A DNA stretch of 64,000 nt, from the NCBI GenBank assembly GCA_964019335.1, contig OZ025736.1, positions 344,492 through 408,491 of the forward strand, given 5' to 3'. Below the pieces are notes generated by a model. The model was not told the DNA's origin and made no database searches. It saw nothing but the letters and a program-made list of their open reading frames with translations. The translations under genes and the position numbers were made by a program. Positions 3,762 through 63,449 of this stretch are shown here, in pieces (position 1 is the first letter of the stretch; every line of letters starts with the position of its first letter). This DNA comes from Diplonema japonicum. Lineage: Eukaryota; Protista; Euglenozoa: Diplonemea.

Positions 3762-6436
3762 CTATTTGTTTGCCATCATGGCCTCCCAGTCCACCCCGTC
3801 GAAGAAACGGTGTGCCTTTAATTTGTCAAGCCCCTGCAACCTTACCTCAGGATCCCTCTCCAAGAGGTTGCGGCACATATCCATTGCTGCCTCCGACATC
3901 GGCTCATCGAACACCAACTCTTTTCGCTGTTTTTTTTTTTTTTTTTTTTTTTTTTAAACCCATAACACTCCAAGGCGCAAATATTGTCGTTTTGAAAAAT
4001 CGTTTTTTTCTCTAAGTACTTTTTCGTCCCCACGACCCCTGGATCTCCAAGAACGACTATAGTGAGGAGTTATTTTCAACTGCAATTAATGCTGCGCTGC
4101 ATCACTTTACCTTGTTATCCACCCACCAAGTGGGTCCCAAATCCGAGTAGATAGGCTAAAAACGCAAAATAACGGGTGTGCATACTGTGCCCAAATTGTT
4201 CCCAAAAAACGCAAAGGTAAAGCCAAAACAGCTACGGACGAGGTCCAACCTTCATGGGTAAGGGAGTTGGTACCCATAGAGACCATAAAATAGGCCAGTG
4301 GGGAGAAAAAAAGCTGTCCCGTGGTACGCAGAAACCTGACGACGCAAAATGGTTATTCCTTCGGTTTTTTTATAAGAAGTTAACAGACGTCATCCAAGAA
4401 GAGACAAACAGGCAAAAGGACGCTGAGATTGATAAAATTTCGACCCAAGACTCCACCGCTTACTCGGATTGGGCATTGCGATGGGTTTACGGCGTGCCCA
4501 GAATCAGCAGTCGTATTGGTCCACAGGACCCATGAAAATCCCCCTTTTCAGTAACACGATGCCCAGGAGACGCTACCAGGAAATCAAAAGTAGCCTCCGC
4601 TTCACTCACACAGAAGAGTCAAACGGTGATGTGTTGTGAAGATACGGGGGTTTCTGGACAGAATTGGTGACAAGTGGGCAAAAGCAGCAGTGCCAGGAAA
4701 ATATTTAAGCATTGACGAGACACTCGTACCTTCACGGGGCAATTGGGGGCTGCGGGTCTACTGTCCTTTCAAGCGTAAAAGATATGGCATAAAAATCTAC
4801 TGCCTAAACTGCGCGAGCACGGGTTATCTTTTGCGTTTCACATCCACGCCACCAAAATCGAGGGGCACGCACTTGAAGATTTCAGTGTTGTGGAAAAAGC
4901 GGGGCTGGGGTTAACAGAGCCTTTGCGGGGAAATGACAACACGGTAGTTTGCGATAGCTACTTTTCGACTGTGGGTCTGGCCGAAGCCCTGCTGTGAGGG
5001 GCTTGCATTTCGTTGGGTGTTGCGGACTCTTCTGGTGGGCCCTAGAAGTGACAATAGTTAACTGCCATGCACTTCAAATAAAATATGGTTCAGGGATGCC
5101 AAAGAGATACACAACCCTGGCTGCTTTTAAAGAGCGCTTTCGAGAGAGCCTAATTGATGGGCCCAACGTTGCAAAAACACCACTCCCGGCACCCAACTAG
5201 TGGTGCACACACACCCGATACCCCAGATTACACCAAACGTGACCGCTAGCCACTCAAAGGGGGCACCTCCAGGGTCTGCAGGTTGAAAGGATGCACAAAA
5301 CGCACAATCTACAAATGCTACACCTGAAACCAACACCTCTGTCCAAATAAGTGCTTTTTTCGTACCACTCTTCCATCACCCCAAAAAGGCCTCTTGACGA
5401 TTTCGAGGCCGATATTCCACCCGCAAATAGGCACTTCTCTCGGTCTGAGACATCTGAGGGCCTGATGCTGCCTTTTTTGTCCCAGGATGCTCAATTTACA
5501 CCCCCCCGTGCACAACCCATTTTGACATGGTCGTTTTTGAGCACCCTACGGCCATTCAACTCTTCATCCCCTTTGTATTTTTATTAATTTTTGAACTTTT
5601 TTTTAAATTTTCCTGGTCCAAAAAACCCGTTTTACCTGCAAACGGGGGTTGAATGCTGCCATTTTTCCCCTCAGATTATGAAAAGGAGCAAAAAAGGGAC
5701 CCCTATGTAGATAGGCCCCGGAGTGTTATGGGTTAAACTCAAAAAACCACGCATACCAATATTAACTCGCACATCTCGTTCAGACTCATTGAATAGAATG
5801 GCGGCAAGCCGCTTATCATCTCGTAAAGGAATATGCCCAAAGTCCACCTGTTGAAGTTTCTTTCATGTGTGTGCGTAGGGCGTACCAGTCCACAGCTTTA
5901 CCACGACCTTCACCAGTTAACAGCTCAGGTGCAAGATACTCAAGTGTGTAGTAGTCATCTTCCTGTGGCTTTGCCAAACCAAAATCGGTGATGTAACAGT
6001 TGCCTTCATTGTCAAGGACACAGTCGTCCAATTTGAGGCCTTCATAGATAATGCCCAAGGAGTGCATGTAATCAATGGCAAGGGCAATTTGGGCGGTGAA
6101 GTGGCGGGCTCGTCCTTCTGTGAATTTCTTTTCCTTCTGTAGGTGGGAAAAGACGCTACCACCGGTGAGGAAGTCAGGGATGAGGTACAGCTTGTCTTCC
6201 GTTTGTAACACGAAGTGCAGCTTCACGATGTAACGATGGCTGAGCCGTCTAAGGATGTCCTTCGCTGCTGGGATGACGTCCTTGTTGTTCATGACCTGCA
6301 TGGCGTAGGTCACACCGGTGTCTTTCTTCGTGACCTTCATCACCTTCCCAAAGGAGCTTTTTCCCTCCACGCAGAGCGGTTCGAAATCTTCCAAACCTAC
6401 GTTACTTGGTTTCCCACCGCATTTTTGAGGCGCCAT
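3762..6436 (-). CDS. AGC-family (SGK/Akt/S6K-like) pseudokinase; exons 6436-5886, 5847-5757, 3926-3762 (268 aa); possibly a pseudogene
   Basis: Splicing GT-AG introns 5885-5848 (38 nt) and 5756-3927 restores AVDW|WTLGIFLYEMISGLPPFY...LIL|RKELVF...LLERDPEVRL...KAHRFFDGVDW. DFG and EYLAPE are present; the catalytic motifs are degenerate. Confidence 0.8.
3959..5732 (+). mobile_element. piggyBac-superfamily DNA transposon relic (internally deleted, frameshifted) inside intron 2 of the pseudokinase
   Basis: Perfect 13-bp TIRs CCCATAACACTCC (3959-3971) and GGAGTGTTATGGG (5720-5732), flanked on both sides by TTAAA; contains broken transposase fragments. Confidence 0.9.
4254..5370 (+). pseudogene. 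Fragmented piggyBac transposase
   Basis: PGKYLSIDETLVPSRG...YCPFKRKRYGIKIYCL...TGYLLRF (first catalytic Asp region), VVCDSYFST (second Asp), TMPRRRYQEIKSSLRF and a Cys-rich C-terminus, spread over several frames. Confidence 0.85.
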
Positions 6437-6854
6437 GACCTCCCTTTTTTTTTTTAATTTTTCTTTTACCCCGTGGGGAAAAGGAAAAAAACAAGGGAAA
6501 ATCAAGAAAGGCTGGAGAAAAAAAAAAAAAAAGAAAAGAAAAAGGGTAGGGGAAAGGCACAAAGAAAAATAATAAAACTAGTACTTTTTTCGCTACAACA
6601 TGCACACACACAAACTCTCCTTTTCTCTTTTTTTTTTTAAAACCCCCCCAACACCAAGAAAAAAATAACCACCGAAATAAGAAGGAAAAAAAAAGGTAAG
6701 AGAAGAAAAAAAACCCCCCCTCTCTCTTTTTTTGTTGTTATGTCACAGAATGAAAAAAAAACCCCCCCCTTTCCTGAGAGGGTGAGATGGTTACACTTCT
6801 ATTAATTTTTTTATCCCCCCCCTCGTGTAAAAAAAAAAATAATCTTGCATCCCA

Positions 6855-8426
6855 TCATCGAGGGGGGATGCTAGATGCAGAGGGTCTAGACGCGATGTGC
6901 CTCCTTTGAGGGGGTTCAGCGTGGCCGTTATGCGGGGTAAGGTCCGGGTCCGGGGTTTTCTTTGGAGACCATATCTGGAGGATGCCATTGCTGCATGTGG
7001 TGGCAATTGCGGAGTTGGGGAGGAATGCCGCACCTAGCAACGGTGCCCCTGCATGAAGCCTCTCTAATACAACATCAGCATCCACCTCAGGCACAGCGTA
7101 TCGTGTTTTCCAAGTAGGTGCCGGTGTTACCGACGTACCACCGTCACCTTCACTGGGAACAGAACTCGCAGCATCTGACAGTTGAACCTGTGTTGGGGAC
7201 AGCGTGGGAGAAGCTTCAAGTTCCCCTGCCAACCCTTTGGCATCAACGTCCCAAAGGTACAACCTTCCATCTAAACAAGCGCTTGTTACAGTCACACCCC
7301 CGTCTGAAGCACGAATTGTGCTAGCAAAGACATCTGATACCCAGTTCTGCGGGCCCACTAGATACGCAAGTCGAGCGAAACCCACTGAAGAGTAGAATGC
7401 AACTGTGTCGTCTTGAGCACCGACTGCCAGAAATCTCCCGCAGGGCGTCCAAGAACAGCATGTTGCAGCGCCGAATCTGGTTGCTAGCTTTGCAACTACT
7501 TTGAATCTTGAGGTGTCCACAATATAGCAGTGTCCGTCTCTACCCGCTGCGGCTATCTTATCATTGACAGCGGAGCCTGATTGTGGGATGGACATGTGAA
7601 GGATGGCTTGTGTCGACAATCGCAAGCACAGAACAGGGTTGCACCCCGGTTTATTTTTCTTAACGCTTGGAAGTTTCTCATCCTCGTCGTACTTCAACGC
7701 TTCAACTGTTTGGTTTGCAGTGCAGTGCTTGTACACAGCACCCGATAGATGCCCGGAAAGAAACGTTGTGTACCCCGGCAACCATAGGAGAGATGAAACC
7801 CCGCATTCCTCACCGGGAGAGGACCGCTTCACCTTTTCACGTGTTGGCGGTGAGGTCACCCTTAACGTGAAACTGCCAGTTGGGAGGTTGTAAAGTAAAA
7901 TATCACCGGATATGAAACCAAAAAGAATGTCGAAGTTAGAGCTGATCGTGTGGGTGAGAAGAAGGGAAGAGAAATGGATCTGCGCAAGCGACGTCGGATC
8001 ACTACGCCTGTCCAGCTGTGTTATGGACACAGAGGAACTGACCACATTATCATGGTTTGAAACCGCTGTAACAAGCGGTGCTTGCGAAGGTGAGTAGTTT
8101 TTGGGTCGAAACGAGCACCTCAGAACGAGGTCTGTTGCCTGCCACGGGCGTTTTTTTGAAGAAGAGTAAAGTACGCTTCCTACCATTCCCACTGCGCTGC
8201 TGGCTTCCCTCTCTGAAGGCGAGAATGTTAGATCTGGGTTTCCCTCTGCCCAACTCAAGTGGCTGCTTGGTAAATCCTGGCTTTTCTGCCTCCTTACCGA
8301 AGATTCGTCATCCATGAAGAGGCCCAACTCATATCGAACTTTACCGCCTGCCACGCCCACAACCTCCCCAGGTAGGTTAAACCCCGTAACCCGGCGGTGG
8401 AGGTAGCTCGTTTCATTTGCACGCAT
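6855..8426 (-). CDS. WD40 protein of the WDR20/DMWD/CreC family
   Basis: GRDGHCYIVD...FGAATCCSWTPCGRFLAVGAQDDTVAFYS...QNWVSDV matches the WDR20 pattern; further WD ends (LYLWD, LQIW). Confidence 0.7.
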   Translation of the reverse strand: MRANETSYLHRRVTGFNLPGEVVGVAGGKVRYELGLFMDDESSVRRQKSQDLPSSHLSWAEGNPDLTFSPSEREASSAVGMVGSVLYSSSKKRPWQATDLVLRCSFRPKNYSPSQAPLVTAVSNHDNVVSSSVSITQLDRRSDPTSLAQIHFSSLLLTHTISSNFDILFGFISGDILLYNLPTGSFTLRVTSPPTREKVKRSSPGEECGVSSLLWLPGYTTFLSGHLSGAVYKHCTANQTVEALKYDEDEKLPSVKKNKPGCNPVLCLRLSTQAILHMSIPQSGSAVNDKIAAAGRDGHCYIVDTSRFKVVAKLATRFGAATCCSWTPCGRFLAVGAQDDTVAFYSSVGFARLAYLVGPQNWVSDVFASTIRASDGGVTVTSACLDGRLYLWDVDAKGLAGELEASPTLSPTQVQLSDAASSVPSEGDGGTSVTPAPTWKTRYAVPEVDADVVLERLHAGAPLLGAAFLPNSAIATTCSNGILQIWSPKKTPDPDLTPHNGHAEPPQRRHIASRPSASSIPPR

Positions 8427-8486
8427 TGTTGAGAAGTTATATATGTATTTTTTTTTTTTTTATATATGTTATTGCATATGGGTGTG

Positions 8487-9945: not shown

Positions 9946-12900
9946 TTAGAACAATTTATCTCCTGCAGGGTCCTTCGCGCTTCCAAGCAAATAAAGAATT
10001 GACAGGGTGAAGCAGACACAGAGGCCTACAGTAATGGCCCACAGCAGCCGAGTGTTCCAGTTTCGAAGAACGGTCACGGGACCGAGGAAGAGGAGGTAGC
10101 AGGGAAAGATGCACAGACTGTGGAAAGATGAGATCAGCGTTACCATGATCATTATCTCTGCGATCCGGCGGTAGACCAAAATTTCACAGAGAAGGATAAC
10201 ACAGCTCGCCAGCAGAATGGTGCTGCAGGACACAGCCACCGGAACCCCCGTCCGCTGCAAGGCACCCGCAACTGCGGCCTCCCTTGTTGTCTCTCTTGCG
10301 AGTAGGCTTGATTGTGTAGCATGTATGTACTCCAAGTACCCCTCCATGATATGGATAGTGTACTCTGCAGCAATGCCCACCAGAAACGTTAGGCCAACCT
10401 GATTTTTTTTTTCTTTTTTTTTTTTTTGAACTATACCTGCTCCGGGGGTCCCAGTTCCCACCCCGCTAGTTTCATATATGACATTGTCAGGACCACGATT
10501 CCCATTCCAGACAGAGACGCCAGCACCTTTTTTTTTTTTTTTTTTCTTTTTTTTTTCTCTCCCATACCATCAATAACAAAGAACATGAAAAGACAATCGC
10601 GATCGCGGCGAACGCAGAACCACCCAAACCGATAGCATAAAGAGTACCGCTTCTTGCTTGTTGCTGCGAGAAAATTGGAACAGGATAATTTAAAAAAAAA
10701 AAATAAAAATAAAAAAAAAAAAAAATACCTCTGTAAAGTACTCAATCCACAAGGGAGACCATTGGAAAGGGCCTCCAAGAAGACCTGCTTTCCCTGAGTC
10801 GATATTTGTCACAGTCTTCATATAGTTCTCCCACCGATCGTACGTAGAGCGGACGTTGTTGCGCTGCTGGACGTCAGCAGGCAGCTTGAACCGAAGCCGT
10901 ACCCAAGCAACCCTGAAGGGGTTGGTTACATCCTGAAGATATGAGGGATCGGAAGTTGTGAAGCCTATGTAGTCCGATTTCTGCTTTTTCACGACAAACT
11001 GGTACAGTATCCAGTCGACCCAGGGTTCCATGCAAGGGAAGCGCAGCAGCCTTATCTCTTCGTTCGTACCTCCTTTGTACAGCTCTTCTTGACACCTCTC
11101 GCCACATTCTTTCATCATCTTTGGCAGTTGTGTGTCTCTGTAGACCACTACCACGTGTGACGCCAAGTACTGCGTCCAGTCATACATTACACATTCTCTG
11201 TGCGATTGGTCTACATACTTGAGACCATCTGCGTTATTCAGCATTCTGTTGCATCTGTCATTCAGCCACGCTTGAGAGTACCTAAAATCGAAGTCCTCTG
11301 CCCTTGGTATGCTCCCAGACATGAGGGTCGATGTGCCGTCCTGGAAAAAGGAGGATGTGTGGGTGTGTGTGTTTTTGTTGTAATACTTCGTTGTAGGCCC
11401 ATGTGTCTTCCTTTATGTTGGCGCCTGACTGTGGCTTCAAACCGGCAACGATTTCGACCTGCGTGTGGGAGAAGTTTGAGGTTTTAAAAAAAAAGGGGGG
11501 AGTGGGTGGGTACCATAAGCGGTTTCTCTATGTCGTCGCCTTCGGGGAACTCACACTCGCAATTCCCCGTGCCCCCGCACTCCCCGCAGGAGTCCGCCGG
11601 GACGCCGTCGTCGCACCCCAAACAGTTGTTGTTGAGGTACCCCGTCGAGTTGATGGTACTGAACATGTTGGTGCACACACCGCAATTATCCCTCCACTGT
11701 TTTTGTTTTGTTTTGTTTTGATTTGTTTTTTTGTTGTACCTTGAAGTGAGTGTCTGTAGCAGAGACCCCGTCGCATCCTAGGATTTCGCCTTGATTGTTG
11801 CAGGAAACGTGGCCAGCGGCGATAAGCTGTTGGGGGATCGAGGCGGGGAAGATGCAAATATCGCACTTGTCACCTCCCCAGTTCCCGAAGCATCTCTTCC
11901 CGGTCCCTGCACCGCAGAACTTGTACTTGTCGGGGACGTCTTCGTCGGCCGCGCCCTTAAGGCTGAGAGGGTAGGGCAGAGGGCAGTGCGAGTGTTCTCG
12001 GCATGTTTCGGGGCAGGTTGAACAGTCGTCACCCCCCCACACCCCACCGACGCATATGCATGCCACGGATCGCGGGTCGGACACTGTGTCGAGCTCAGGA
12101 CAGATTCCGGAGTTGGAACACGAATTCAGCTCGCAGTTCTTTCCGCCCCAGCACCCGATGCACACGCACTCCCCGTCGACTTTCTTGCCCCTCTTGTTGC
12201 AGTCTAGTTCCCACCTGCAGAACAAGCCGTCTTCGAAATCAGGGTCGCACACACATTCGCCGGTGGCATGATCTAGCTCACCGTGGTCGCATTTGCTTCG
12301 CTGCTTATGCGTGCAGTTGAGGCCGACACCCGCAATGCTCTCCACCCCGCGTGGGATGGAGTAGGTCGAGGTGTTTGTTGTGTTCTCGTCGGACTCGTAT
12401 TTGAACCTGTCACACATCGTGCACATGCACCGCCCCTCGTCTTGTGTAGGTGCGAATGTCGGGTCAGTGCTGCACTTGCACCCGCAGTCATCGGTGCCGT
12501 TCGATGCGTTGCCGCCGACTTGGCAGTCGTTGCTGCACAGCTGTGTGCCGTCAGGCCAGGTCTTCAGCTCATCGATGTCGGTAGGGATGAAGCCCTCCGC
12601 GCATACCCCGCAGTCGCCCGACTTGTGGAGTATTGGGTCGTATTCCTCACCCGGTGTGTGCGCCCAGAACCCTAGGTTGTAGCTGCTGTGGCACACGCAC
12701 TCTCCAGTTATGGGATCGCACGTGCCCCTTTCCTGCCTACATGTCTGAATGGTGCACATCACGTTGCAGTTCGCCTTGTACCCCGCGGTCCCCGGTGTCC
12801 CTAAAGGTCTCGGGAAGTGCTCTTTCTTTGCGTTATCCTTACCTTCCAAGAAGCACAGGTTGCAGTTGCCATGTTTAGGCTTTGTGGCACACATTGCAGA

Positions 12901-15900
12901 CTCGTCTTTGCATTTGTTCTTCACCGGGACAAGGGAGAGGCCACACCCGGTGCCTGTCTTGACGTAGACCGTTGTGCCCTCAGAGCCGGGAAGGTAGCAG
13001 GTCCCACAGTCGTCATAAACCCAGCCTGCGGTGTAGTTGGTGTTGACCGCGCCGCAGGGCTTAGCTTGGTCTACACAGTAGCCCTCTGACCATCTGCAGG
13101 GGTTGCTCTCGCAGGTTGTTTTCACCGTGTGCACCATGCAGTTAGACTGCTGCCCCACGCAATCCACGCATTGGTTGCCGCCACCGCAGATACCACATGT
13201 GTCCATTTGGTTGAACATCTGTTTCCCGCAGGTCTCGTAGGCTTGCTTGTCGCTAGACAACTGCGTCCCGTGTGGATTCCCTTTCCCGAATGGCGCTGGG
13301 AAGTCAGTGTACGGCCTGTGGAACGGACCGCAGTAGTCGCAACTTCCTTTGATGGGGAACTGCTCCCTGACCTCCTTGAACTTCTCGTAAGTGCTTTGGT
13401 AGTCGAGCAAACGCGGCGCTTCCGGGCTGGCTTCCAACTGTGACAGCACCAAGATGATGAACAGCAAAAGCTTTAACGCGTACCCTAGCAAGATGAACGG
13501 GTACGCCGCTCCTAGAAAAGGCGTGTACACATTGTAGAAAAACCTCTCTAGTACGGTATAGCCTTCGTGCTTCTCACGCTTGCCCATGATGCGGCGGTCT
13601 TTTTCTTCGCGGGTCTCCCCCACACGCTTCCCGAACCTTCCGAACCTCCTCTTGACTTGCCCCCTGCGGGTCCACCAGTCGGACACCAACGTGCAGCAGT
13701 TGGTAAGGTTGCTCCACCAAGTGGTTTTCGTGTTTTGTTGCTTTGTGTTTACCTCAGGCGCGTTGCCCAACGGTACCTCTCTGAACGTCTCGTCGTTGTT
13801 GCGGTTGCTGTTGTCTTGTTCGCCCGCCTGGGCGGCGTTGCCCTCGGCCACGGGGAGTGGGTCCACTTCCTCAGCGGTGATAGTATCATCCCTTGCGGCT
13901 TCCTCAGGCATGTCCCACTCGATGCCGCTTGTGACGTGTCGCACCTCGTCGTTCGACTCTGCGATTATCTGCGCGATCATCGGCAGCTTCTTCACACAGT
14001 CAAGCTTCCTCTGCGAAGAGGGATCGACGAAGAGGTCCTCGCCAAGGTAGGTCGAGACGTGCATGTTCTTGCTCTCCTCATCCCAGTGCTGTCTGTACCT
14101 GTCTCTGTATGTGGCCATGTCCACTGCTCCTTCAAATGTGTCAGTCTGAGCTGGCAGTGTGAGGCTCTTTGCTATTCCGGTCTCCAAAGCCGTGTAGGGA
14201 ACGGGGATCTGGATGATGCTGCTGTAGGGCTGCTTCCTGCGGCACCGTTGCGGGCGGGTCATGGCACCCGAGAACTGCTCGAACGTGGCCTCCTGCTCGG
14301 CGGCGATCTCTTCAGTGGTCTTCTGTTTCTTCGGGCGGAGCTTTGCTTGTAGCTTCCCGAAACGTCCACCTGCTTCGCCAAACATAACCTTCAGCTTGTC
14401 CGCGTCTGTCTCCGTTGCAGGAGCAGGGAGAGGAGGCTCTTCGATGGCTGTGTACATGGTGGGGACGTTGTTCGTTTTCCTGCTAATTAAGTCGAAAGCA
14501 CGGAGCGTCTGGCGAAGGATGGGCGGGTGCACAAGATGGCGGCGGCGAAGCAAGATCTCCTTCCTGCGTTGCGTGTTACGCCTACGGCGCGACACATGGT
14601 AGTGATGAAGGATCAAGACACACGGGAAGAAGGTGAGAAACATGTAAATATTAATTAGCATAAGCCACAGCATGAATACACCGTTGTCCCGAATTGCGGG
14701 GACGGGTGAGATGGCGTTCATGATGAACGCGACGCCTGCGGTGATGTGGGAAATGGTCACGCCCGCACCGGCTTTTCTGAAACAGAAAGCAAGGCGCTGG
14801 GGAACGTTCAAGGTGTTCTTCCTCCCGTTGGTCTCCATAAACGCAGACTGCCGAAACGTGTTAAAAAACACCATGACCCCGTTGAGGCTTACAGTCATCA
14901 GCACATAAAACGAGAGCAGTGTGAGTAACGACAACGGTTTGTCCTTAGTTTTTATATGTATGAATGTCCCGGAGAAGTACGTCAAAGTAAGTTGAAATAT
15001 AGCCATCGTTGCTATAAAGAAGGAATGGGTGTAGAACCAACACGCTCCGAGCACTATCATGACAGCCATGAACACGTACCAGAAGTCCTTGTCCATTGCC
15101 TCGTCTAGCTTTGATTCTAAGATACCATCACCGCCAAATGTGACTTGAAGATTCGGCGGGATATGAGTAAGCCACAGCCTCTCCAAATTACTCTTTGACG
15201 GTGTAGGGTTGCCGTCGGCAACAGCGGAGACAACTGCGTCCAAATATGCTGTTAGAAAGCTGTAAAATCTGTTGAGGTGCTTTTGAGCCTCCGATTTCGA
15301 CGTTATCTCCTTCCCGTCAACGACGAACGGACGGCCGATTATAATCTGAGAACGCAGGAGTAGTGATGTCGATGCAGAACTCCCGTCTTTGTTTTGGTAC
15401 GCATCTGTGAACCAGTTCCACGAAGGATTTTGGCTGAAAAGCTTCAGAACGTCCTCTTCGTGTGTTTGAAACACGTCAGGGTCGACCCGTTGATCAGCTG
15501 GACCGTCGAGCGTTTTATAATGAAAATCCCAGAACAATCTCCAAGGACTTCCTGCTATCGTGTCGGACTTAATATCCCCAGGGAAATAATATTGTGCGAA
15601 TGACGTAAACGGCGTGCAGGGTCTGTTGTCAACAAGGGTTGAAACTCCGTTCTTTCGGGTGCTTTTGTAGCAGACTCCCCAGAATAACGGGAGTATCCGG
15701 ATTCGCTGCTCAACTTGTTTTATGAAACGGAGGTAGTCCTCGCGTTGCAAAAGGTTGAACTCTTCCCGGAACGATTTTGCCTTCTCCTCGGAGTTCGCGC
15801 ACTCCCGGAGCTTGTCCTGATCCCGGACTTTAATTTTAAATTGAAGATCAACACGTTTCCAAGGAAGCCCTTGGCTTGACACCGAACTTACTTCAGAGTC

Positions 15901-16296
15901 TAAACCGGATTCCTCATTGTACGCGTATACTTCTAAAATTCTGTCCCAGTCTGTACTTGCAGCTTCGACAACATCCCGCTTGCGTACAGTTGAATGGTCT
16001 GAAATTTCAAAACTCTCGAGGAGGGTGTCAAAGTCCATTACATCACTGCTGAAGAGGCTCACGCAAGTTAGGAAGAATGGGATGACGCTGAAGACTAATA
16101 TGCAGATAGTTGGGTAGCTGGCGATGAGGGTTGTATAGGCGTATGTGGGGTATCTTTTACCGATGACCGGTGTCGGCCGTTGTGGTAGCCCTCGAGACGA
16201 CGACGCCCCCCCCGTTGCCACTCCTTGCCCTGGTGCTCCCACCGGCGCTACCTGCCCTTTTTTATTCATCCTACCCAAACTCCCTACCTGCCCCAT
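9946..16296 (-). CDS. Dispatched/Patched-family (RND, sterol-sensing domain) protein with a large Cys-rich/EGF insert; exons 16296-11740, 11696-11514, 11458-11387, 11340-10729, 10663-10568, 10526-10437, 10398-9946 (2020 aa)
   Basis: SSD-like TM cluster (RLAFCFRKAGAGVTISHITAGVAF...SPVPAIRDNGVF); second TM cluster (GWELG...VGIAAEYTIHIMEGYL...ALQRTGVPV). Six phase-0 GT-AG introns give one continuous frame. Confidence 0.8.
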
Positions 16297-21354: not shown

Positions 21355-22187
21355 CTATTCCTTCTTGCTCTTCTTCGACTTCTTAGCCGGCTTTTCATCG
21401 ACGTCCTCGGCCTTACGTTTCTTCTCCTTCTTCTCCTTCTTTTCCTTCTTCTCCTTCTTGGGCTTGTCCTGTGTTAAAAAAAAAAAAAAATGATTTTTTT
21501 TTTTTAACACAAAAAAAAAAAAAAAAAAAAAAAAACACACCTCCACAAAAACGAGCGGCTCAGCCTTTGAAGCATCAGCATCGGCCTGCTTCTCCTCCCT
21601 GTTGTAGGTCTCGTCTCCCTTCTTGTCGGTTTTGGTCTTCTTGCGAAGACCGAATCCAACAGACCCATCAAGGGACATGAGTCTGGCCTCAACCCTCTCT
21701 CTGTAGGCGTTACCAGCCTCAGCAGAAGCAGTAGTGTCCTGGTTGAAGGAGTCGATCCTTGCTGCGAGGGACGTCTTGGCAGCAAGCACACGGGCCATCT
21801 TACCCTTGTGCTCCTTCTGCGCCTGCCCGATAAGGGAGGTGTTGAAGATGAGACCGTACTTAGGGGTTGCCTCACGCGCCTTCAGGGCCTTGAAAAGTGC
21901 CTTTTCGGCACCGAGCAACTGAACGGTAGAGGCAGGGTGCTTGGCAAGCTGGAGCAGCGATCCCGCCTTTGACACCAAACGAGCTCCAACAAGCTCGCCA
22001 ACCATGGCAGTCAGGTTGGGCGCGATGGCCTGCATCCTGTGGCGGAGGTACTCACCAAGCTGCTCCCTGTAGTCTTGCATCTCAACAGACTCCCTTGCAA
22101 GCTTGGTCACATTGTCAATGTCATCAGTAGAGATGTCAGAACCCATCGACACGGCGGCAACCTATTTTTTTTTTTTTTTTTCTTTCC

Positions 22188-22218
<31 letters not shown>

Positions 22219-22932
22219 ATAAACACCTCCTTAAGGGTCGCTTCGGTTTCTTCGTCAAGGATGTCTGAGAGGTCTGCGGACATGATGCCCTTTCTGGTTT
22301 TGCAGTCACGGACCACCTTTGCGTAGGCGATGTTGTCCTTGACAATCTTCTGCATTTCAGGGAAGTGCCAGCCGTACCATTCCTTGACCCGCATGACGTA
22401 GGTGTTGAGCTCCTTGTCGAGGTCGTCCATGAGAGCGATGGCCTGGATGATCATAAGATCGATCTTGTCAGGGGAGAACTTCAGTTTGTACCTTGCAAGG
22501 TTGTGCGCGAGGGCGAGGGACGCCTGGTTGTTGGTGGTCTCACTCACACTGTCCACGAGCTCCTTGATCTGGTGGCTGACAGTTCGAAGGACTTCGTTCA
22601 CCTCGTCACCGTGAACACAGGGGATCTCCACCTTTTCCTTGATAGACTTTCCAAGTTTCACATCCCACACTGCAAGCTCGTCTTTGATCCCCTTACCCAC
22701 ATAGTTCTTTTTCAAAAATTTCTCCAGACCCTTCGAGCAGGTACCGTCCACCAGTGCAGTCACGCTCTCCAGCGCCTCTTTCGTGTCCTGTAAAAAAAAG
22801 ATTTTTTTATTTTTTTTTTTTAAAGTTGCGTACCCTGAACGGCTTGAACGCGGCAAGCTTGAATTTACCCTTATCAGGGTTCACCACCTTCAGAAGGGCG
22901 TACCCGGTGGGCAGTTCGTAAAGGGCGTGCAT
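21355..22932 (-). CDS. NOP58: Nucleolar protein 58 (box C/D snoRNP); exons 22932-22834, 22787-22227, 22161-21541, 21468-21355 (464 aa)
   Basis: LAHNLARYKLKFSPDKIDLMIIQAI...KELNTYVMRVKEWYGWHFPE; PASTVQLLGAEKALF; TPKYGLIF; KKE tail; three phase-0 introns. Confidence 0.93.
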
Positions 22933-45393: not shown

Positions 45394-45467
45394 TCAAACA
45401 GGATCATCATCGGCAACCGTGGGAAGAGGAATCCGGTGGCCTCCGGGCATAGCACGAGCCATTTTCT

Positions 45468-45503
<36 letters not shown>

Positions 45504-46521
45504 CCCCCAAAAAACACACCTTGACCATAGGAATATCGGGGTCGGGTATGTTGTAAATGCATGTCCCAGCAGTCACAACAGCAGCACCAAGAATGAAGTG
45601 GGGCGTCGGTGTGAACCCCCACACAAGCGCCGCATACACCCCGGACACAATGATCGCCACACCCGTGGCAAACCCCTTCAATATGTTATCCGCATACTTA
45701 ACCACAACCGCCACGAGAATTCCACCACCGGCATGGATGAACACAAGGACCCAGGTGGTAGCGGTGTACCCAGTAAACAAACTGAAAGACTTGTAAGGAA
45801 TACCGTCTACCGCCGCCATTGAAAAACAAGCGAGAACTAACGAAAAGATCCCAAGTTGAATGTTCCGTTCCGCGATAGAAGGAGGGGTCCCTTTGAGTAT
45901 CTTCTCAAAGTATACAGATGCAAAGGCGGACGATGTCCCCGAGACGACACAGCTCACAATTCCAACCAGGGTGTTTTGTTTTTCCACAGACGCGACCTTT
46001 TCTGTCCCTTGTCCCTGAGACGACAGGATGATACCTAAGGTCAACAATAGTACTGAAGACCATTGAACGCACGACAGGTACCTTTCCAACAACCAAACTG
46101 AAAATATGGCCGCTAGTAATAGCTTCACCTGGGATAAGAGCTGGAACATCATGGCATCTAAGTTTGACAGGGACACGAAAAGCAGGTAGTTTTGCAGGGT
46201 GAACAGGGCAGCTGGGACAGATAATTTCACAGTTTCCAAGCAGAACACAACGTGGTACAGCCTTTCCCGGAAGTGTGTGCCTTGTCCGTTGAGCAGCAGT
46301 TCGTACCACATCGCCACCAGGCAGAACAGCATTTTCACGATTTCCGCCATTAGAATTAACGAGGAGGATTTGTATAATGTGCCTTTGTTTTGTGCCCGTG
46401 ACCACCTCGTCATCAGCACCAGGACCGCGTTTTGAACAACCAGGACCAGAAGTGACAAGTACCCTGCATTTATCGGGCCGTATCCTGGTATTTTCACCTT
46501 GACCTTGGTCGGATCTACCAT
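45394..46521 (-). CDS. SLC35A-type nucleotide-sugar transporter; 54-nt intron at 45519-45466; start uncertain (46521 or 46569)
   Basis: LVVQNA, VPAALFTLQNYL, QVKLL, SVYFEKILK, RNIQL, GGILVAVVVKYADNILKGFAT. Confidence 0.88.
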
Positions 46522-46793: not shown

Positions 46794-47689
46794 AGAGAAG
46801 GGAAAAAAAAAGAGGGGAGACTGGTGTTTTACTTTTTTTTGTCTACTCCCATCGTGATTTTCTTTCTTTCTTTTTTTTTTTTTCTTTTTTTTTTTTCTCG
46901 TGGCGGAACATACTGGGTGTATGGGATCAAGGGGGGTAAATAAAAAAATTTACAACAGCTTTCATGAATGGGGTGTGTGGGTGTAGGGGAGGGAATGACT
47001 AAAAGAAGAAGAAAAAAAAGAGAAAACAAGAAAGGGGAAAAAAAAAGGGGGGGCAGGGGGTTCGCGGAAGATCGCGAACCCAGGAAAGAAGTGGTCGAGA
47101 GTCGGACAAGAGATGAAACGGAACAGAAAGAAAAAAAATACACCTCCTCTCTTCCCTCTCCCTCTTGTCGTCCGTTTTCTTTTCTTTTTTTTTTTTTTCC
47201 TTCTCGTTTTTCTTCTTTTTTTTCCTTTTCACATGAACAAAAGAAATGGGGGTGGGGGAAAAAAAAAAAACAAAATTTAAAAAATAAATGAAAAGGGAGG
47301 AAGTTTTTTTTTCAGAATAAGAAAGGGGCACAAAAAAAGGGGGGGGAGGGAAAAACAAAACGTCAAAAATCGAGTTCTTTTTTTTTTCCCCGAAAGGGGG
47401 AGGGGAAAATTGAGAGGGGTATCAAATACAATAGTGGTGACGAGACGGTATCAAGGGAATTTTTTTTTTTTTTTTCCTTTTTCTTTTTTTTTTCCCCCGT
47501 TTTTCTTCCATAAAAAAAAAAAAAAACTATAGGGAAATACAAAGGGGGTATGGAGAAACAGAAAGAAAAATCGAAAAACAAAAAAAAAAAAGAAAAGATC
47601 TAAGAAAGAGGCTTGCGGATGCTGGTGATGGGTGAATGCTGCGCCTGTTATTTATTGTTCCCCCCCCACCCTCCTTTTTTTACCCCCCC

Positions 47690-49590
47690 CTAGCATACAG
47701 AGAGAGGGCTTCCGAACTGACGACGGGGAGAGTTGGATCTCATTCTATCAGGGGAAACTCCAACATGTGCAATGGGGCTGGCAGCAGCTGTACTGTACTG
47801 TAGAGACCTAGGGGAGGCGACTCCCCTTGTGCCAGTGTGGCGCACGCTGAACGCGCCCGCCTCGTCCCTCAACATGGCTTCCTTCTGCTCCAAGTTGTCC
47901 CTCTGCTCCCTCAGCCTCACCTCCTGGTCGATCAAAGGTGCTTCTTCTGCCTGAACCTTAGCACGTGCAGCAGCGTGTTCCATGTTCTCCTGCTCCAGCG
48001 ACCTGCACATGGCCTCCTGTGCCTCCACTGCCCTCACAGATTCCACTTCGATGGTCTTCTTTGCTGCCTCTTTTTCCCTGCAGATCAAAAGCTCCTGCTC
48101 TTCCCTTTCCTTCTGCACCTTCTGGTGCGCCGTCGCCTCCCTCGCGCCAAGGTGCGCCGCGGTGCAGTCCCTCTCCCTGTCCTGCGCCCTTGCAAGGTCA
48201 CCCTTCGCCAACGCTACACGCTCCGCAGCCATCTGAACATCCCTCGTGGCCTCGGCGCTGATCATCGCCGCCTGCTGCTCCACACCCTGCGAGTTCGCAA
48301 GGTCGCTGCGTGCCCTGTTGGTGTTGGCACGCTGTGCCTCCACCTCCCTTTGCTGCTCCATCAGGAGGCGCTCGATCTCGCGCAGCCTCTCCTCGCTCAA
48401 CGCCTGCTCGGACTCCTGCTGCCTCAGCCTGAGCTCCGCAGCCTCCATCTCCCTCTGCGCCTCCACGTGCTGGAGCTGCTTCGCCCTCTCGTTGTCCCTT
48501 GCCGCCTGCTCCTCAGCGCACCTCCCAGCAACCTCCGCCCTAGCACGCTCCGTCTCCAGTCTCGAGGCGTCCAAGATTGCCAGTGCTTCGCGCTCCTTGG
48601 CCTCTGCCTCGGCCACAGCCTGGACCTGAGCCGCCAACCTGCCCTCCTGTGCTGCTGTCTCAGCAGCAGCCTGGGCAGTGGCAGCACGGGCATCGATCTC
48701 TCTCGCCCTGAGGGACTCGAGGAGCCTCCTTGCGGCCTCGATGCCCTCCTTCTGCCTGACGTCCTGCCAGTACTCCCTCGCCCTGTAGTGCATGGCGTCG
48801 AGCAAGGTGGGGTATCTCTCGCAGAACCTCTGGAACTCGGGGTACGACACGCTGCCGTCACGGTTGGTATCCGCCTTGACGAAGAGGTCGCCGATGGTGT
48901 TGGGGCTGAACTCGAACTGCAGGTTTGTGAGGAAGGCTTGGAATTCGGACATGTCGATGGCGCGGATCTTCCTGGCGTCCATCTCGTCAAACACCATCGA
49001 CACCTTCTCCTCGTGGGAGGCGTCGGCACCGGACCTCAGGAGGATGTGGGCAGAGGCGGTGGTGGGCGTGGGGACGATGATGGGTGCCACTGGCACGTGG
49101 GCGAGGGACGCGGCAGACGCAGAGCGGTGAGGCGACACACCAGCTGCGATCAAAGCAGACGCAGAAGCGGAGGAAGGGGCGCTGTTTTTTTTTTTTTTTT
49201 TTTTTTTTCTTCTAGAACTCCCATACCGAACAGCAGGGGGGAGCTTGCTCTGCACCTCCCTATGCCAAGCAGTTTCCGGCTGGAACACGTAGATTTGACT
49301 GAAGTCCTGCAGCTGAGTGCTGCTCAGAAGGTCCACCCACAGCTCAACCTTTTTTTTTTCTTTTTCCCCCCCGCCCTTGTGATCCCTCATACCCTCTCAT
49401 CAAAAATCTGCATCCTATCAATGGCGAAGGTGCTTGGGCACCCAGCAGGAGCTCTGGCTGTGAAGTCGGACCCGAACACCTGCTCCACTTTGCGGTGCAA
49501 ATCGGGGATCGTTGGCTGGGCAAGGAATTCCACCTCGTAATTGGTTTTCGTGCCATGAATGTCGGCTGCAATAAGGAGCGTGAAGACCAT
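47690..49590 (-). CDS. BILBO1: BILBO1-like flagellar pocket collar protein (N-terminal ubiquitin-like domain, EF-hands, coiled coil); exons 49590-49393, 49348-49227, 49181-47690 (603 aa)
   Basis: AADIHGTKTNYEVEF...P....L...VEQVF...QIFDER|VELWVDL.....L....QIYVFQ matches the kinetoplastid BILBO1 NTD pattern; EF loop DTNRDGSVSYPEF; YPTLLDAMHYR; long coiled coil. Could be a paralogue. Confidence 0.8.
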
Positions 49591-56038: not shown

Positions 56039-58674
56039 CTAACACCACAAGTGCGACGCCTTGTCTTCAGCTCTTCGGGGGGTTTTCGCCCACCCCAGAG
56101 CCTCATGCCTGGAAAAGGATCGCTGCGAGTGCGCTGCGGTTAGCAACTGCCGGTCCTGTACTTTTTTTTTCTTTTTTTTCTTTTTCTCCTCCCCCTTGTA
56201 TACCTCAGAAATATCACGTGACCCCGCAGGGCCATCAACTTGCACTGGGAGCGCCGCCATCTAGTTTAAAATATTTTCATTAAATCATCTCATCATACCG
56301 ATGACGGCTCTCTGTAATTAGTGTGGGAAGAGGAGGTGCTTCTCGGGGGGGACCGGGGATGTCCGATCGGAGTAAGCGGACGAGGCGGCGTGGCAGCTTG
56401 TGACGGACACGACAAGTTGGGAGCAGGGGCGGGGGCATCCATCCCAGCCCTATGCCTCGGAGGCGTCTGATGGCCGTACGACTGGATTAACGGTTCCTGT
56501 GCCTGCGACATCTGATGTTGCTGTTGTTCCCTCTGTGGCTCAGCCGGCTGTACTGCTTCATACGCGGCCCTGTTGTCCTCCATGCTGCTGCTGCTGTCGC
56601 TGCTAGCATCTTCTCTGCCTTGCGATGCTGCAGGCGTGTGGTCCACCGCTCGCACCAGAGTCGAGACCGGTGTGGCGGACCTCATGACATCTGCCCTTTC
56701 AGCAGGCGCCAACGGTGCAACCGGTCGCGACAACGACGCTGACACAGGTGAGAGCGGTGCCGCTGGCTGCAACGCCATCATCGGTGCTGCTGGCTGCGAG
56801 GTCATCATCGGCGTTTGTTGTGATGTTACCATCGGTGTAGGCGCGATGCTTGGAGTGGGCATGGCCGCAGGCACAAGGCTAGGCGACCGAGGAGGAGACG
56901 GGGGTGTGGGGAGAGCACGGGAACGGAACTCGCTCTTGGTGTGCACATGCGGGGACGAGGTTCTTGTCCTGCTTGCTAGCCTGTTTCTGGCCGGTTCTCC
57001 GAGATGCTCGGCAGGTACGCTTGTGAGAGAACCCCCATGGTAGCCAGGTACGCTGTACCCGCCCTCCCTGACTGGGGTAGGGTTGTAAACAGTGCTCATA
57101 TTGGCGGGAAGGATGCCCGGCATACCCCCAGGGCCTTGTGCAGGGGGTCCTTGTGCGCCTTGTCCCATGACGTAAACCACTACGGTCCTTGCGTCGCCCT
57201 GCCCGTCGGTGCCGCCGACCTGTATGACGTTCCCGTTGGGTTCCGAGCCGATGCTGACACCGTGCACAACGGTGGTCCCGCTGGCAGGGACGATGTGCGT
57301 GGTGCGCTGGACGCTGCTGGGGGCGTCGGAGTGCCTCGCAGGAGATGCTGTTAGTTCATATGCCCTGGCTTCACTTCTTGCCTCAGTTTGCGGAGTCTCC
57401 GTCCTGCCCATCACTCTATCCCCTTTCTCGGGCGAGGGCGACGCAACTCTGCGAGATGGTGACAGCTGCGCTGCCATGCTGTGTTCAGGGGGCTGGGGCT
57501 TCACGGTGGTGGAAGACCACCCGGTTTCTATGTCTAACTTAAAAACAGACTTTTCGGAGAAGAGAGGTACGTAGGCGCAGCCTTTGTGCCAGACCATCGG
57601 CTGGCCTGAGTGGGGAGGGGGTTGGAGCGTGCTGCGCTTGGCGATTTGCTTCCAGCGGCCTTTTTTGAGGTTGAAAATCCAGGAGTCGGAGTAGCGGGTG
57701 GGCGGGTTCCCCACCTCACCCCCGCAGATGACCATGCTGCGGTCGCCGTCCATGGCGGCAGCGCAGTGCATGATCCGCCGCTTAGGGGCGGCGTACGAGG
57801 AGAAGGTTTTGGAAGAGGAAGCCAGACTGCTACTGCGGGATGGGTTGGGGATACGCTCGATGCGATTCTCGGGGAACCAACCTTCCTCACCACCGTCAAC
57901 ACGTCCCTTGACCCAACCAGGGTTCGACCTCGGCCCTGTGGACTCGGGGGCCATCATGATCAAATCATTCTTGGCCAGCTGGATCTGCAAAGGCTCGTAC
58001 GGTTCAAAGTCGTACACCGCCCTTGCCATGGCGACAGGCTGCGACGACGACATCGAAAAAGACCGCCACTCCTGGTGCTTGAAGCTGAACACCCAGATCT
58101 GATCAGACTCTGTGTCCTCGCCTATAGTAATCCCACCGTACACCAGTAGATTCTTACTACAAGCCACCATGGAGTGCCCCCACAGCGGACCGGGGGATGG
58201 TGCAATATCGACACGTGACCATATCAGAGAATGCAGGTTGAGGACATACATCGATGACTCTTGGGTGGTGTCCTCGCGGGCGGGTGTTACAAAGCCTCCA
58301 GACATGTAGATGCTGTTGTTGTAGATAGCCGATGCGTGGTTGCATCTGGAGGCGGGGAGGTCGCCTGTTGTGGTTGATGCGGCCCATTCTCCGGTCGCCA
58401 GGTTTAAGGCAGGGAGGATTACCTCGTCAGCTCCGCCTTCTTGAGTCAGCCCATGGACGATGTACATAACGTCATCGAACTCGTGTGCTGTGTGGAAGCA
58501 CCTCGGGCTCGGGACCACCCCTCGGGCCATCATCTTGTTCAGTTCCCCCTTCCCTTCGGCTTCCATGTACCACACGTCTGTCAGCATTTTCTTGTCTTTA
58601 TCCCGACCGCCATATATTATTATCTTCCCGTCGTAGACGACTGCCGAGTGGCCCTGCACGGGTAGCGTCTCCAT
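56039..58674 (-). CDS. Kelch-repeat protein with inserted SH3 and Pro-rich tail; exons 58674-56299, 56260-56204, then 56155-56039 (alternative acceptor at 56161)
   Basis: Kelch blades (GHSAV..IIIYGG, PRCFHTA, SRCNHAS..YMSGG, WGHSM..VYGG); SH3 ARAVYDF...GWVKG...GWFPEN. The 3' exons are less certain. Confidence 0.75.
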
Positions 58675-61721: not shown

Positions 61722-61786
61722 CTCCAGTGCCGCCTGTTGTGATCTTTTTTCTTTTTCTTTTTTTTTTTCTCTTAGTTTTTTTATAC

Positions 61787-61817
<31 letters not shown>

Positions 61818-61818
61818 G

Positions 61819-63155: not shown

Positions 63156-63353
63156 CTAGCGTGTTGGCTGTGCTGAGGGGGTGTCCCCTTCTTCAATTCC
63201 TGCCTGCTGCATGAGATCACCAATACTCTTTTCCAGATCATCAATTCTTCCACCCATTTCATCAATTCTGTTGACTATGGCATCTGCCATCTCTTGGAAT
63301 CTCCCCTGCATCTGCTGAAGCAAGTTCTGAACGAAAACAGTCAATTCCTATGT

Positions 63354-63390
<37 letters not shown>

Positions 63391-63449
63391 CCTTCCCTTA
63401 CCTGCGTCCCCTGCGGTGCCGCCCCAGAAGGTGCTGCTTTACCACTCAT
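63156..63449 (-). CDS. HSBP1: Heat shock factor-binding protein 1; intron 63401-63348
   Basis: ELTVFVQNLLQQMQGRFQEMADAIVNRIDEMGGRIDDLEKSIGDLMQQAG. Confidence 0.92.

What the first reader, a model, noticed from the sequence alone, without database searches (positions are those of the whole stretch)
3927..63401. Short introns with poly(A) instead of polypyrimidine acceptors; acceptor choice fits a length ruler plus first-AG scanning
Seen: 21 GT-AG introns, most of them required to restore conserved protein sequence; all but one are 38-72 nt. About 13 end in A-tracts: 3927-5756, 10399-10436, 10527-10567, 11697-11739, 22162-22226, 26916-26957, 28632-28688, 28759-28815, 45466-45519, 49182-49226, 49349-49392, 56156-56203, 63348-63401. 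Three use an AAG acceptor (10527, 26916, 49349). Every AG at +35 or earlier is skipped (e.g. +24 in 10399-10436, +33 in 49349-49392, +35 in 28484-28544), three introns are exactly 38 nt, and the AG used is the first one past that point. Exceptions: NOP58 intron 2, the ambiguous Kelch intron 2, and the kinase intron, which fits only in its reconstructed pre-insertion form. Established: U2AF65/U2AF35 normally read a pyrimidine tract plus YAG. Inference: this spliceosome defines 3' ends by distance from a GTRY donor and AG scanning, with any of the many As serving as branch point, largely without a pyrimidine tract.
Basis: partly seen in the sequence, partly recalled or inferred. Interest (0 to 1): 0.82.

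Follow-up and report, generated by a model that had tools for sequence, protein, structure and literature searches.

The report
Tiny A-rich introns, no length ruler
The window holds real, very short introns of the marine protist Diplonema japonicum, many with runs of A where other organisms have a pyrimidine tract; this oddity is already published, and the proposed "length ruler plus first AG" rule for choosing the intron end fails on further introns of the same genome.

Summary
The introns are real. Two more are supported by protein homology and 3 were not tested. The genome is very probably Diplonema japonicum.

The A-rich 3' ends are already in print (Thakur et al. 2025, RNA 31:1826). That paper reports a median intron length of 41 nt, GTATG donors, CAG acceptors, A as the most abundant base in the "PPT", few branch motifs, and U2AF1/2 present. 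First readers of this scan noted the same feature in at least 8 other windows of this genome, and one follow-up exists.

The ruler idea does not hold as a mechanism. In 33 supported introns, 29 obey "first AG at or after +36". However, a 32-nt intron uses an AG at +32, while AGs at +33 and +35 are skipped in other introns. Three of the four introns of 65 nt or more skip later AGs: NOP58, eEF2, and a 1830-nt kinase intron.

What does hold: no AG occurs in the last 10 nt (0 of 288 positions, 14.1 expected). YAG is used in 28 of 33 acceptors but appears in only 6 of 51 skipped AGs.

Only 14 of 33 tails are A-rich; 8 are pyrimidine-rich. U2 snRNA keeps a canonical branch-pairing box.

Verdict: ordinary U2-type splicing of near-minimal introns. 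Low novelty.

The parts
49349..49392 (-). 44-nt GT-AG intron, A/G-rich tail, AAG acceptor; AAG at +33 skipped
   Evidence: Exact junction from spliced protein P0001
49182..49226 (-). 45-nt intron with a 24-nt A run and CAG acceptor
   Evidence: Exact junction from P0001
47645..47698 (-).
   Evidence: Exact junction from P0001
28759..28815 (-). 57-nt intron, A-run tail, CAG acceptor
   Evidence: Exact junction from P0018
28632..28688 (-). 57-nt intron, A/C-rich tail
   Evidence: Exact junction from P0018
28484..28544 (-). 61-nt intron with a conventional T-rich tract (18 T in -25..-4); AAG at +35 skipped
   Evidence: Exact junction from P0018
26916..26957 (-). 42-nt intron, A18 run, AAG acceptor
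   Evidence: Exact junction from P0018
11697..11739 (-). 43-nt intron, A/C-rich, no internal AG
   Evidence: Exact blocks and junction from P0138
11459..11513 (-).
   Evidence: Exact junction from P0138
11341..11386 (-). 46-nt intron with a C/T-rich tract and CCAG acceptor
   Evidence: Exact junction from P0138
10664..10728 (-). 65-nt intron, T-rich throughout, no internal AG
   Evidence: Exact junction from P0138
10527..10567 (-). 41-nt intron, A-run, AAG acceptor
   Evidence: Exact junction from P0138
10399..10436 (-). 38-nt intron, A-run; AAG at +24 skipped
   Evidence: Exact junction from P0138
22162..22226 (-). 65-nt NOP58 intron (T run, then A run, TAG acceptor); AAG at +45 skipped, so it breaks the first-AG rule
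   Evidence: Alignment to a solved NOP58 chain ends at the donor. Pfam Nop coordinates run 1-63 then 68-226. Frame check; AG positions
22788..22833 (-). 46-nt first intron of NOP58: A run followed by T8, then ACAG
   Evidence: Reading of the N-terminal exon, and the start of the solved-chain alignment
5848..5885 (-). 38-nt intron in a protein kinase gene, mixed composition
   Evidence: Joins ...AVDW to WTLGIFLYEM across a split Trp codon; kinase subdomain continuity. That this is the AGC subdomain IX motif is recalled
3927..5756 (-). 1830-nt kinase intron holding an insertion with inverted-repeat ends; ends in A26-CAG; 98 AG dinucleotides in all
   Evidence: Flanking exons carry successive kinase subdomains. 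AG count. No transcript evidence
45466..45519 (-). Listed 54-nt candidate intron near the 3' end of a nucleotide-sugar transporter gene; A30 run
   Evidence: Frame check only; not verified
56156..56203 (-). Listed 48-nt candidate intron downstream of the Kelch gene
   Evidence: Weak frame support only; not verified
63348..63401 (-). Listed 54-nt candidate intron, A29 run
   Evidence: Frame check only; not verified

Best explanation
These are ordinary U2-type GT-AG spliceosomal introns of Diplonema japonicum that have shrunk close to the minimum workable size (32-77 nt here, median 46). Their interior is filled with the homopolymer runs that fill all non-coding DNA of this genome. About 40-60% have A-rich tails and the rest have mixed or pyrimidine-rich tails.

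The 3' end is chosen as in other eukaryotes. A branch adenosine lies some 11-35 nt upstream, probably inside the A-rich stretch (inferred). After it, the first good acceptor is used: preferably CAG, and never within about 10 nt of another upstream AG. Purine-AG sites inside the tract are poor competitors.

The apparent 'ruler at +36' is a by-product of three things: the compact length distribution, a steric minimum length, and this AG-free zone.

Shown here: the junctions, the composition, the AG statistics, a canonical U2 snRNA, and a U2AF65-like gene. Inferred: the branch position and the order of events.
For: 1. JUNCTIONS. 13 of 13 examined with spliced public proteins are exact GT-AG. Twenty more are supported by homology.

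2. AG-FREE ZONE. In the last 10 nt there are 0 AGs in 288 positions against 14.1 expected (P = 7e-7). The nearest skipped AG lies 11 nt from the acceptor.

3. BASE BEFORE THE AG. For used acceptors it is C 27, A 5, T 1. For the 51 skipped AGs it is A 30, G 15, T 4, C 2. Fisher P = 1e-11. Every skipped AG at +28 or later is AAG or GAG (on the first 25 introns).

4. NO FIXED THRESHOLD. +32 is used in one intron; +33 and +35 are skipped in others.

5. LONG INTRONS. Three of the 4 introns of 65 nt or more skip AGs beyond +36.

6. MACHINERY. U2 snRNA matches Rfam U2 at 139-141 bits with an intact GUAGUA box, and there are at least 7 full-score copies. The best solved-structure relatives of a C19 gene are U2AF65 RRM2 and UHM.

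7. PRINT. Published RNA-seq gives 10,131 introns, 98.3% GT-AG, median 41 nt, GTATG donors, CAG acceptors, A most abundant in the PPT, and U2AF1/2 present (Thakur et al. 2025; Results and Discussion read).

8. BACKGROUND. A and T runs of 10 nt or more are about equally common outside the supported introns on the sense strand (95 A, 89 T).
Against: - No branch point has been mapped, and YTRAY occurs in only 2 of 33 introns. The branch-anchored part is therefore inference from other organisms.
- U2's GUAGUA box cannot pair well with a pure A run, so how U2 docks is unexplained.
- In the transcript-exact subset the zone beyond +36 is free of AG (0 of 73 positions, 4.85 expected, P = 0.008). Some constraint therefore reaches further than 10 nt.
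- Two of the four rule violations (the kinase 1830-nt intron and NOP58) rest on homology, not transcripts.
- The 20 non-transcript introns came from conserved genes I chose (eEF2, CCT, proteasome), not from a random sample.
- Within the window alone, A runs are not significantly enriched over T runs in introns (12 against 5 inside, 95 against 89 outside, P = 0.20). The A preference therefore rests mainly on position-specific composition and on the published logo.
Confidence: 0.78

Rival explanations
1. The spliceosome measures about 36 nt from a GTRY donor and takes the first AG after that point, without needing a tract or a branch motif.
For: 29 of 33 supported introns obey it, including 13 of 13 transcript-exact ones. 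No AG lies between +36 and the acceptor in those 13 (0 of 73 positions, 4.85 expected, P = 0.008). A well-placed T5-ACAG at +21 seems to be ignored in a predicted 41-nt intron (unverified).
Against: An AG at +32 is used in the CCT-eta intron, where exon ends map to residues 448 and 449 of one solved chain. AGs at +33 and +35 are skipped in other introns. The eEF2 intron skips +39 and +43, with exon ends at residues 783 and 784. NOP58 skips +45. The 1830-nt kinase intron has 96 AGs beyond +36. Over the whole set, depletion beyond +36 is weak (3 observed, 7.6 expected, P = 0.055).
Confidence: 0.06
2. The A tract is a true signal. It functionally replaces the pyrimidine tract and is read by a retuned U2AF65 or by another A-binding factor. 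It may also keep cis acceptors distinct from the pyrimidine-rich spliced-leader acceptors.
For: A is 52.9% of positions -25..-4 in 33 introns, and the most abundant PPT base in 10,131 published introns. The 1830-nt intron still ends in A26-CAG and must be found among 98 AGs. In the alignment to human U2AF65 RRM2, the query differs at both RNP motifs. An earlier follow-up of this scan reported U/C-rich tracts at leader acceptors (not tested here).
Against: 8 of 33 introns have plain pyrimidine tails and 11 are mixed, sometimes within the same gene (three A-type and three C/T-type in one gene). A runs of the same kind are common outside introns, including directly before start codons. No binding data exist. 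I could not compare U2AF65 with species that have C-rich tracts.
Confidence: 0.25
3. The A runs are neutral filler. A genome-wide tendency to grow homopolymer runs fills every non-coding stretch, and selection only removes what harms splicing, such as competing YAGs or strong structure.
For: The window has 107 A runs and 94 T runs of 10 nt or more on the sense strand, and only 12 and 5 of them lie in supported introns. Introns also hold T, C and G runs. Run-level A:T enrichment in introns is not significant (P = 0.20).
Against: The published logo from 10,131 introns shows a position-specific A preference. A runs usually abut the acceptor. A runs are the context where one A-to-G change creates an AG, yet the last 10 nt are AG-free.
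Confidence: 0.3

Closest known systems
Diplonema japonicum introns as described by Thakur et al. 2025 (RNA 31:1826, PMC12621601)
   Same: Same organism and same features: GT-AG, median about 41 nt, (G)/GTATG donor, CAG acceptor, A as the most abundant base in the 'PPT', few YTRAY motifs, U2AF1/2 and all snRNAs present (Results and Discussion read).
   Different: In the sections I read, that paper proposes no rule for acceptor choice and gives no minimum length in the main text. The supplementary length plots and logos were not seen. Here the junctions are tied to a chromosome-level assembly, and the ruler idea is tested.
Branch-anchored 3' splice-site choice with an AG exclusion zone (Gooding et al. 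2006, Genome Biol 7:R1, PMC1431707: search listing and start of abstract seen). The scanning-and-competition model and the ranking CAG/UAG over AAG over GAG are recalled from Smith and co-workers and come from no call.
   Same: An AG-free stretch lies in front of the acceptor. The first good AG after it is used. YAG is preferred over RAG. AGs further upstream are tolerated.
   Different: Here the zone is short (at least 10 nt), the tract is often A instead of pyrimidine, and no branch motif is visible.
Very short, length-constrained introns of ciliates and of chlorarachniophyte nucleomorphs (recalled, no call)
   Same: Introns sit near a steric minimum, with few internal signals.
   Different: Those have very narrow length peaks. 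Here lengths spread from 32 to 77 nt and a 1830-nt intron coexists, so length itself is not the signal.
Non-conventional introns of euglenids and hemistasiid diplonemids
   Same: Same phylum, and unusual intron features.
   Different: Those lack GT-AG and have base-paired ends. All 33 introns here are GT-AG.

Membership tests
U2-type (major) GT-AG spliceosomal introns | GT at the 5' end and AG at the 3' end | tested here: met
   33 of 33 supported introns. For the 13 exact ones, GT-AG was the only canonical pair among the boundary shifts that reproduce the protein.
U2-type (major) GT-AG spliceosomal introns | Removal reproduces the mature coding sequence | tested here: met
   13 junctions match spliced public proteins in exact blocks. 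eEF2 and CCT-eta exon ends map to adjacent residues of solved chains.
U2-type (major) GT-AG spliceosomal introns | U2 snRNA with a branch-pairing box | tested here: met
   Rfam U2 at 139-141 bits with GUAGUA intact.
U2-type (major) GT-AG spliceosomal introns | Branch motif (yUnAy) upstream of the acceptor | tested here: not met
   YTRAY in 2 of 33 introns; YTNAY in 4 of the first 25. The published figure is 13.9%.
U2-type (major) GT-AG spliceosomal introns | Polypyrimidine tract before the acceptor | tested here: inconclusive
   Tails are pyrimidine-rich in 8, mixed in 11 and A-rich in 14 of 33.
U2-type (major) GT-AG spliceosomal introns | YAG acceptor | tested here: met
   28 of 33 (27 CAG, 1 TAG); 5 are AAG.
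U2-type (major) GT-AG spliceosomal introns | U2AF large subunit and SF1 genes present | tested here: inconclusive
   A U2AF_lg-like gene matches in three pieces on C19, each below the curated cut-off. Its best solved relatives are U2AF65 RRM2 and UHM. The SF1-HH Pfam model gave no hit, but the control rang nowhere, so that result is uninformative. U2AF1/2 are reported in print.
Length-measured tiny introns (fixed ruler from the donor) | One distance threshold separates skipped AGs from used AGs | tested here: not met
   +32 is used; +33, +35, +39, +43 and +45 are skipped.
Length-measured tiny introns (fixed ruler from the donor) | Narrow length distribution without long members | tested here: not met
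   Lengths are 32-77 nt plus one of 1830 nt among 33 introns.
U12-type introns | RTATCCTT-type donor | tested here: not met
   Donor 5-mers are GTATG 16, GTGTG 5, GTATT 5 and others; none is GTATC. The U12 donor motif itself is recalled.
Euglenid/hemistasiid non-conventional introns | No conserved GT-AG; intron ends base-paired | tested here: not met
   All 33 are GT-AG. End pairing was not tested.

The most novel reading that the evidence does not exclude
In D. japonicum the A run is a genuine, selected 3' splice signal. It would be read by a U2AF65 whose RRM2 has lost the usual RNP residues, or by a separate A-binding factor, and branch formation would occur on any A of the tract without U2 base-pairing. 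Cis introns would then be kept chemically distinct from the pyrimidine-marked spliced-leader acceptors in a cell where both reactions compete on every transcript.
Probability: 0.2. Interest if true: 0.7.

Novelty: already known. Interest (0 to 1): 0.27.

Why it matters
If the A tract were a real signal, it would show that a conserved spliceosome can swap its pyrimidine-tract requirement for a purine one. It would also offer a natural system for asking how cis- and trans-splicing are kept apart. As it stands, the oddity itself is published. This check mainly removes an attractive but wrong mechanism (a donor-anchored ruler) and replaces it with testable numbers: a 10-nt AG-free zone, a YAG preference, and a minimum length of 32 nt or less.

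Tried and rejected
AB INITIO INTRON CALLING. I tried this on the window plus 200 kb of the genome, to get an unbiased test of the rule.
- An open-frame and codon-score caller gave 1256 candidate pairs, which is far too noisy.
- Donor-anchored 'valid AG' tests with codon or hexamer scores were either as noisy on the antisense control or left only 15 loci, many of them decoy donors.
- A dynamic-programming parser recovered at most 6 of the 13 exact introns.
- A scan of the threshold L, asking whether the frame after the first AG at or beyond L stays open, was flat and had no power.
None of these is used as evidence. Predicted introns seen are mentioned only as unverified.

MIS-CALLED ACCEPTOR. 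In one search I first took some C/T-rich ...CAG sites upstream of ATG codons for spliced-leader acceptors. One of them (before the ATG at 11322) is in fact the acceptor of cis intron 11341-11386. I therefore make no claim about leader acceptors.

GENE MODEL. The gene at 9949-11412 is not separate. It is the 3' part of the 2020-aa sterol-sensing-domain gene.

A/T RUN ENRICHMENT. Enrichment of A over T runs in introns within the window was not significant (P = 0.20).

LENGTH BY TAIL TYPE. Length did not differ between A-type and pyrimidine-type introns in the full set (P = 0.49).

ROWS DROPPED.
- The C63 CCT junction, because the HMM pieces overlap by 24 positions.
- The C104 189-to-195 junction, which is either one 113-nt intron or two introns around a 21-nt exon.
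- The C14 and C19 two-intron junctions, and L043 75-to-106.
- For L044 I took the GTATG donor rather than the GTTCC solution; the acceptor is the same either way.

JOINED STEP LEFT OUT.

SUPPLEMENTS. I did not ask for supplementary files. Thakur et al.'s Supplemental Fig. S3A (length distributions), Fig. S4 (branch and MEME logos) and Data S1 (snRNAs) may already show the minimum length and the U2 sequence.

Full report
WHAT THE WINDOW IS.
The 64-kb window is eukaryotic nuclear DNA with nearly every gene on the minus strand. The genes include a FYVE/C2 protein, kinases, NOP58, an adenylate cyclase, an ABC transporter and a Kelch protein.

Earlier notes of this scan name the organism as very probably Diplonema japonicum. 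The assembly has 62.5 Mb in 132 contigs. The published D. japonicum YPF1604 assembly has 62.30 Mb and 118 pseudomolecules (PMC13598402, abstract seen). The best named relative of one window protein is a Diplonema papillatum protein at 79% identity.

CHECKING THE INTRONS.
I searched single exons only and left the joined step out. Three public spliced proteins match the window in exact blocks:
- P0001, 615 aa, a Trinity/EukProt transcript model;
- P0018, 1605 aa, also Trinity/EukProt;
- P0138, 2020 aa, source not named.

For each pair of successive blocks I listed every boundary pair that reproduces the protein. In all 13 cases exactly one pair was GT-AG. Four are additional: 47645-47698, 11459-11513, 11341-11386 and 10664-10728.

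Homology supports four more window introns:
- The NOP58 65-nt intron at 22162-22226. The alignment to a solved NOP58 chain ends at the donor, and the Pfam coordinates are continuous.
- A 46-nt first NOP58 intron at 22788-22833.
- A 38-nt kinase intron at 5848-5885.
- The 1830-nt kinase intron at 3927-5756. Its flanking exons carry successive kinase subdomains, and it holds an insertion with inverted-repeat ends.

Three listed introns (45466-45519, 56156-56203, 63348-63401) got only a frame check.

WHAT IS ALREADY IN PRINT.
Thakur et al. 2025 (RNA 31:1826; I read Results and Discussion) mapped 10,131 RNA-seq-supported introns in D. japonicum. They report:
- 98.33% GT-AG and a median length of 41 nt;
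- a (G)/GTATG donor and a CAG acceptor;
- YTRAY in 13.9% of introns;
[quoted passage not shown] So the core observation is known. A full-text search for 'Diplonema japonicum' plus 'intron' found 7 papers, 5 of them listed; none of the listed titles other than this one concerns nuclear splicing. In the sections I read there is no rule for acceptor choice.

First readers of this scan noted the same A-filled introns in at least 8 other windows of this genome. One follow-up judged the cis/trans contrast real but half published.

TESTING THE RULER.
The window offers few introns long enough to test the rule, so I added introns from other parts of the same genome, taken from conserved genes where exon ends can be placed on solved protein chains or on profile coordinates:
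- eEF2: a 77-nt intron whose exon ends map to residues 783 and 784 of one chain, and a 47-nt intron.
- A CCT-eta gene: introns of 37, 40, 43 and 32 nt. For the 32-nt intron the exon ends map to residues 448 and 449 of one chain.
- Two more CCT genes: introns of 55 and 53 nt.
- Proteasome subunit genes: eight introns of 38-56 nt. Each is the only GT-AG solution, or the only one with a consensus donor, within 2 profile positions.

Together that makes 33 supported introns. These extra genes were chosen for conservation, not at random.

RESULTS (CALL 85 UNLESS STATED).
- Lengths are 32-77 nt plus one of 1830 nt, with a median of 46.
- 'First AG at or beyond +36' holds for 29 of 33.
- The four failures are informative:
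  - The 32-nt CCT-eta intron uses an AG at +32, whereas AGs at +33 (49349-49392) and +35 (28484-28544) are skipped in transcript-exact introns. No single distance threshold can be right.
  - NOP58 skips an AAG at +45.
  - eEF2 skips AAGs at +39 and +43.
  - The kinase intron holds 96 AGs beyond +36.
- Three of the four introns of 65 nt or more break the rule.
- The last 10 nt before the acceptor contain 0 AGs in 288 positions (14.1 expected, P = 7e-7).
- The zone beyond +36 and more than 10 nt from the acceptor contains 3 AGs in 155 positions (7.6 expected, P = 0.055).
- In the 13 transcript-exact introns alone that zone has 0 of 73 positions (4.85 expected, P = 0.008). This is why the rule looked so good inside the window.
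- Skipped AGs come as close as 11 nt to the acceptor.
- The base before the AG separates used from skipped sites. Used: C 27, A 5, T 1. Skipped: A 30, G 15, T 4, C 2 (P = 1e-11). Among the first 25 introns, every skipped AG at +28 or later is AAG or GAG.

COMPOSITION.
- Positions -25..-4 are 52.9% A, 21.1% T, 19.0% C and 7.0% G.
- By my cut-offs, 14 tails are A-rich, 8 pyrimidine-rich and 11 mixed.
- One gene (9949-16296) has three A-type and three C/T-type introns.
- Proteasome introns are often T-rich.
- Runs of 8 nt or more in the last 40 nt: A in 18 introns, T in 10, C in 2.
- The window's sense strand has 107 A runs and 94 T runs of 10 nt or more. Only 12 and 5 of them lie in supported introns, which is not a significant enrichment (P = 0.20).
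- The A preference is therefore real in position-specific terms and in the published logo. It is not exclusive, and homopolymer runs are a property of all non-coding DNA here.

MACHINERY.
- U2 snRNA genes (at least 7 full-score copies) match Rfam U2 at 139-141 bits, and the branch-pairing GUAGUA box is intact.
- A gene on contig C19 matches the U2AF large-subunit model in three pieces. Its best solved-structure relatives are human U2AF65 RRM2 and UHM.
- In that alignment the query differs from the human chain at both RNP motifs of RRM2. Whether this changes specificity, or is shared by diplonemids with C-rich tracts, I could not test.
- The SF1-HH Pfam model gave no hit, but its control rang nowhere, so this says nothing.

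READING.
The introns are ordinary U2-type introns near the minimum size. Three things explain acceptor choice better than a donor-anchored ruler:
- a short AG-free zone in front of the acceptor;
- a strong YAG preference;
- tolerance of upstream purine-AGs.

This is the general branch-anchored picture. The AG exclusion zone is from Gooding et al. 2006 (listing and start of abstract seen). The scanning-and-competition ranking is recalled. That the branch lies in the A-rich stretch is inference; nobody has mapped it.

The ruler is a good heuristic (88% of introns) because most introns are under 62 nt. The more novel possibility remains open but untested: that the A run is a selected signal read by an altered factor, possibly to keep cis acceptors distinct from spliced-leader acceptors.

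LIMITS.
- Only 13 junctions rest on spliced public proteins; the rest rest on homology.
- My ab initio attempts had no power.
- Supplements of the key paper were not seen.

Noticed in passing
window, minus-strand start codons at 3505, 16296, 20491, 31706, 42088, 44037, 52678, 55696: Many start codons are directly preceded by a sense-strand poly(A) run. Ten of 163 A runs of 8 nt or more end within 3 nt of an ATG that opens at least 100 codons, against 0 of 33 C runs, 0 of 20 G runs and 1 of 157 T runs. This looks like a poly(A) leader in the 5' UTR.
   Followed up: partly
window 3927-5756 (minus strand): The long kinase intron is a short A-type intron into which an element of about 1.8 kb with roughly 20-nt inverted-repeat ends has inserted. 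The gene's exons still read through cleanly.
   Followed up: partly
L025 (G000:C19:431548-435201), ORF 1516-2667: The U2AF65-like protein differs from human U2AF65 at both RNP motifs of RRM2 in the tool alignment. It also has a long insert between RRM2 and the C-terminal UHM.
   Followed up: partly
L002 (G000:C12:799470-802662): A U2 snRNA gene (1501-1693) lies about 0.8 kb upstream of an SRP RNA gene (2468-2772) on the same strand.
   Followed up: no
L033 (G000:C104, CCT gene, between profile positions 189 and 195): This is either one 113-nt intron or two introns around a possible 21-nt micro-exon. A T19 run followed by AG sits at +34 from the first donor.
   Followed up: no
window 9949-16296 (minus strand): A 2020-aa sterol-sensing-domain protein gene carries all six of its introns in the last 500 codons or so; the first 1519 codons are intron-free.
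   Followed up: no
window 26675-31706 (minus strand): This is an adenylate cyclase plus AAA_16 ATPase gene of 1605 aa. Its closest non-diplonemid relatives in the search are mainly bacterial class-3 cyclase/TPR proteins, plus a few other eukaryotes, at roughly 23-32% identity.
   Followed up: no
L010 (G000:C12:220001-230000), sense positions 846-922: The eEF2 intron contains a run of ten AAT repeats before its ACAG acceptor.
   Followed up: no
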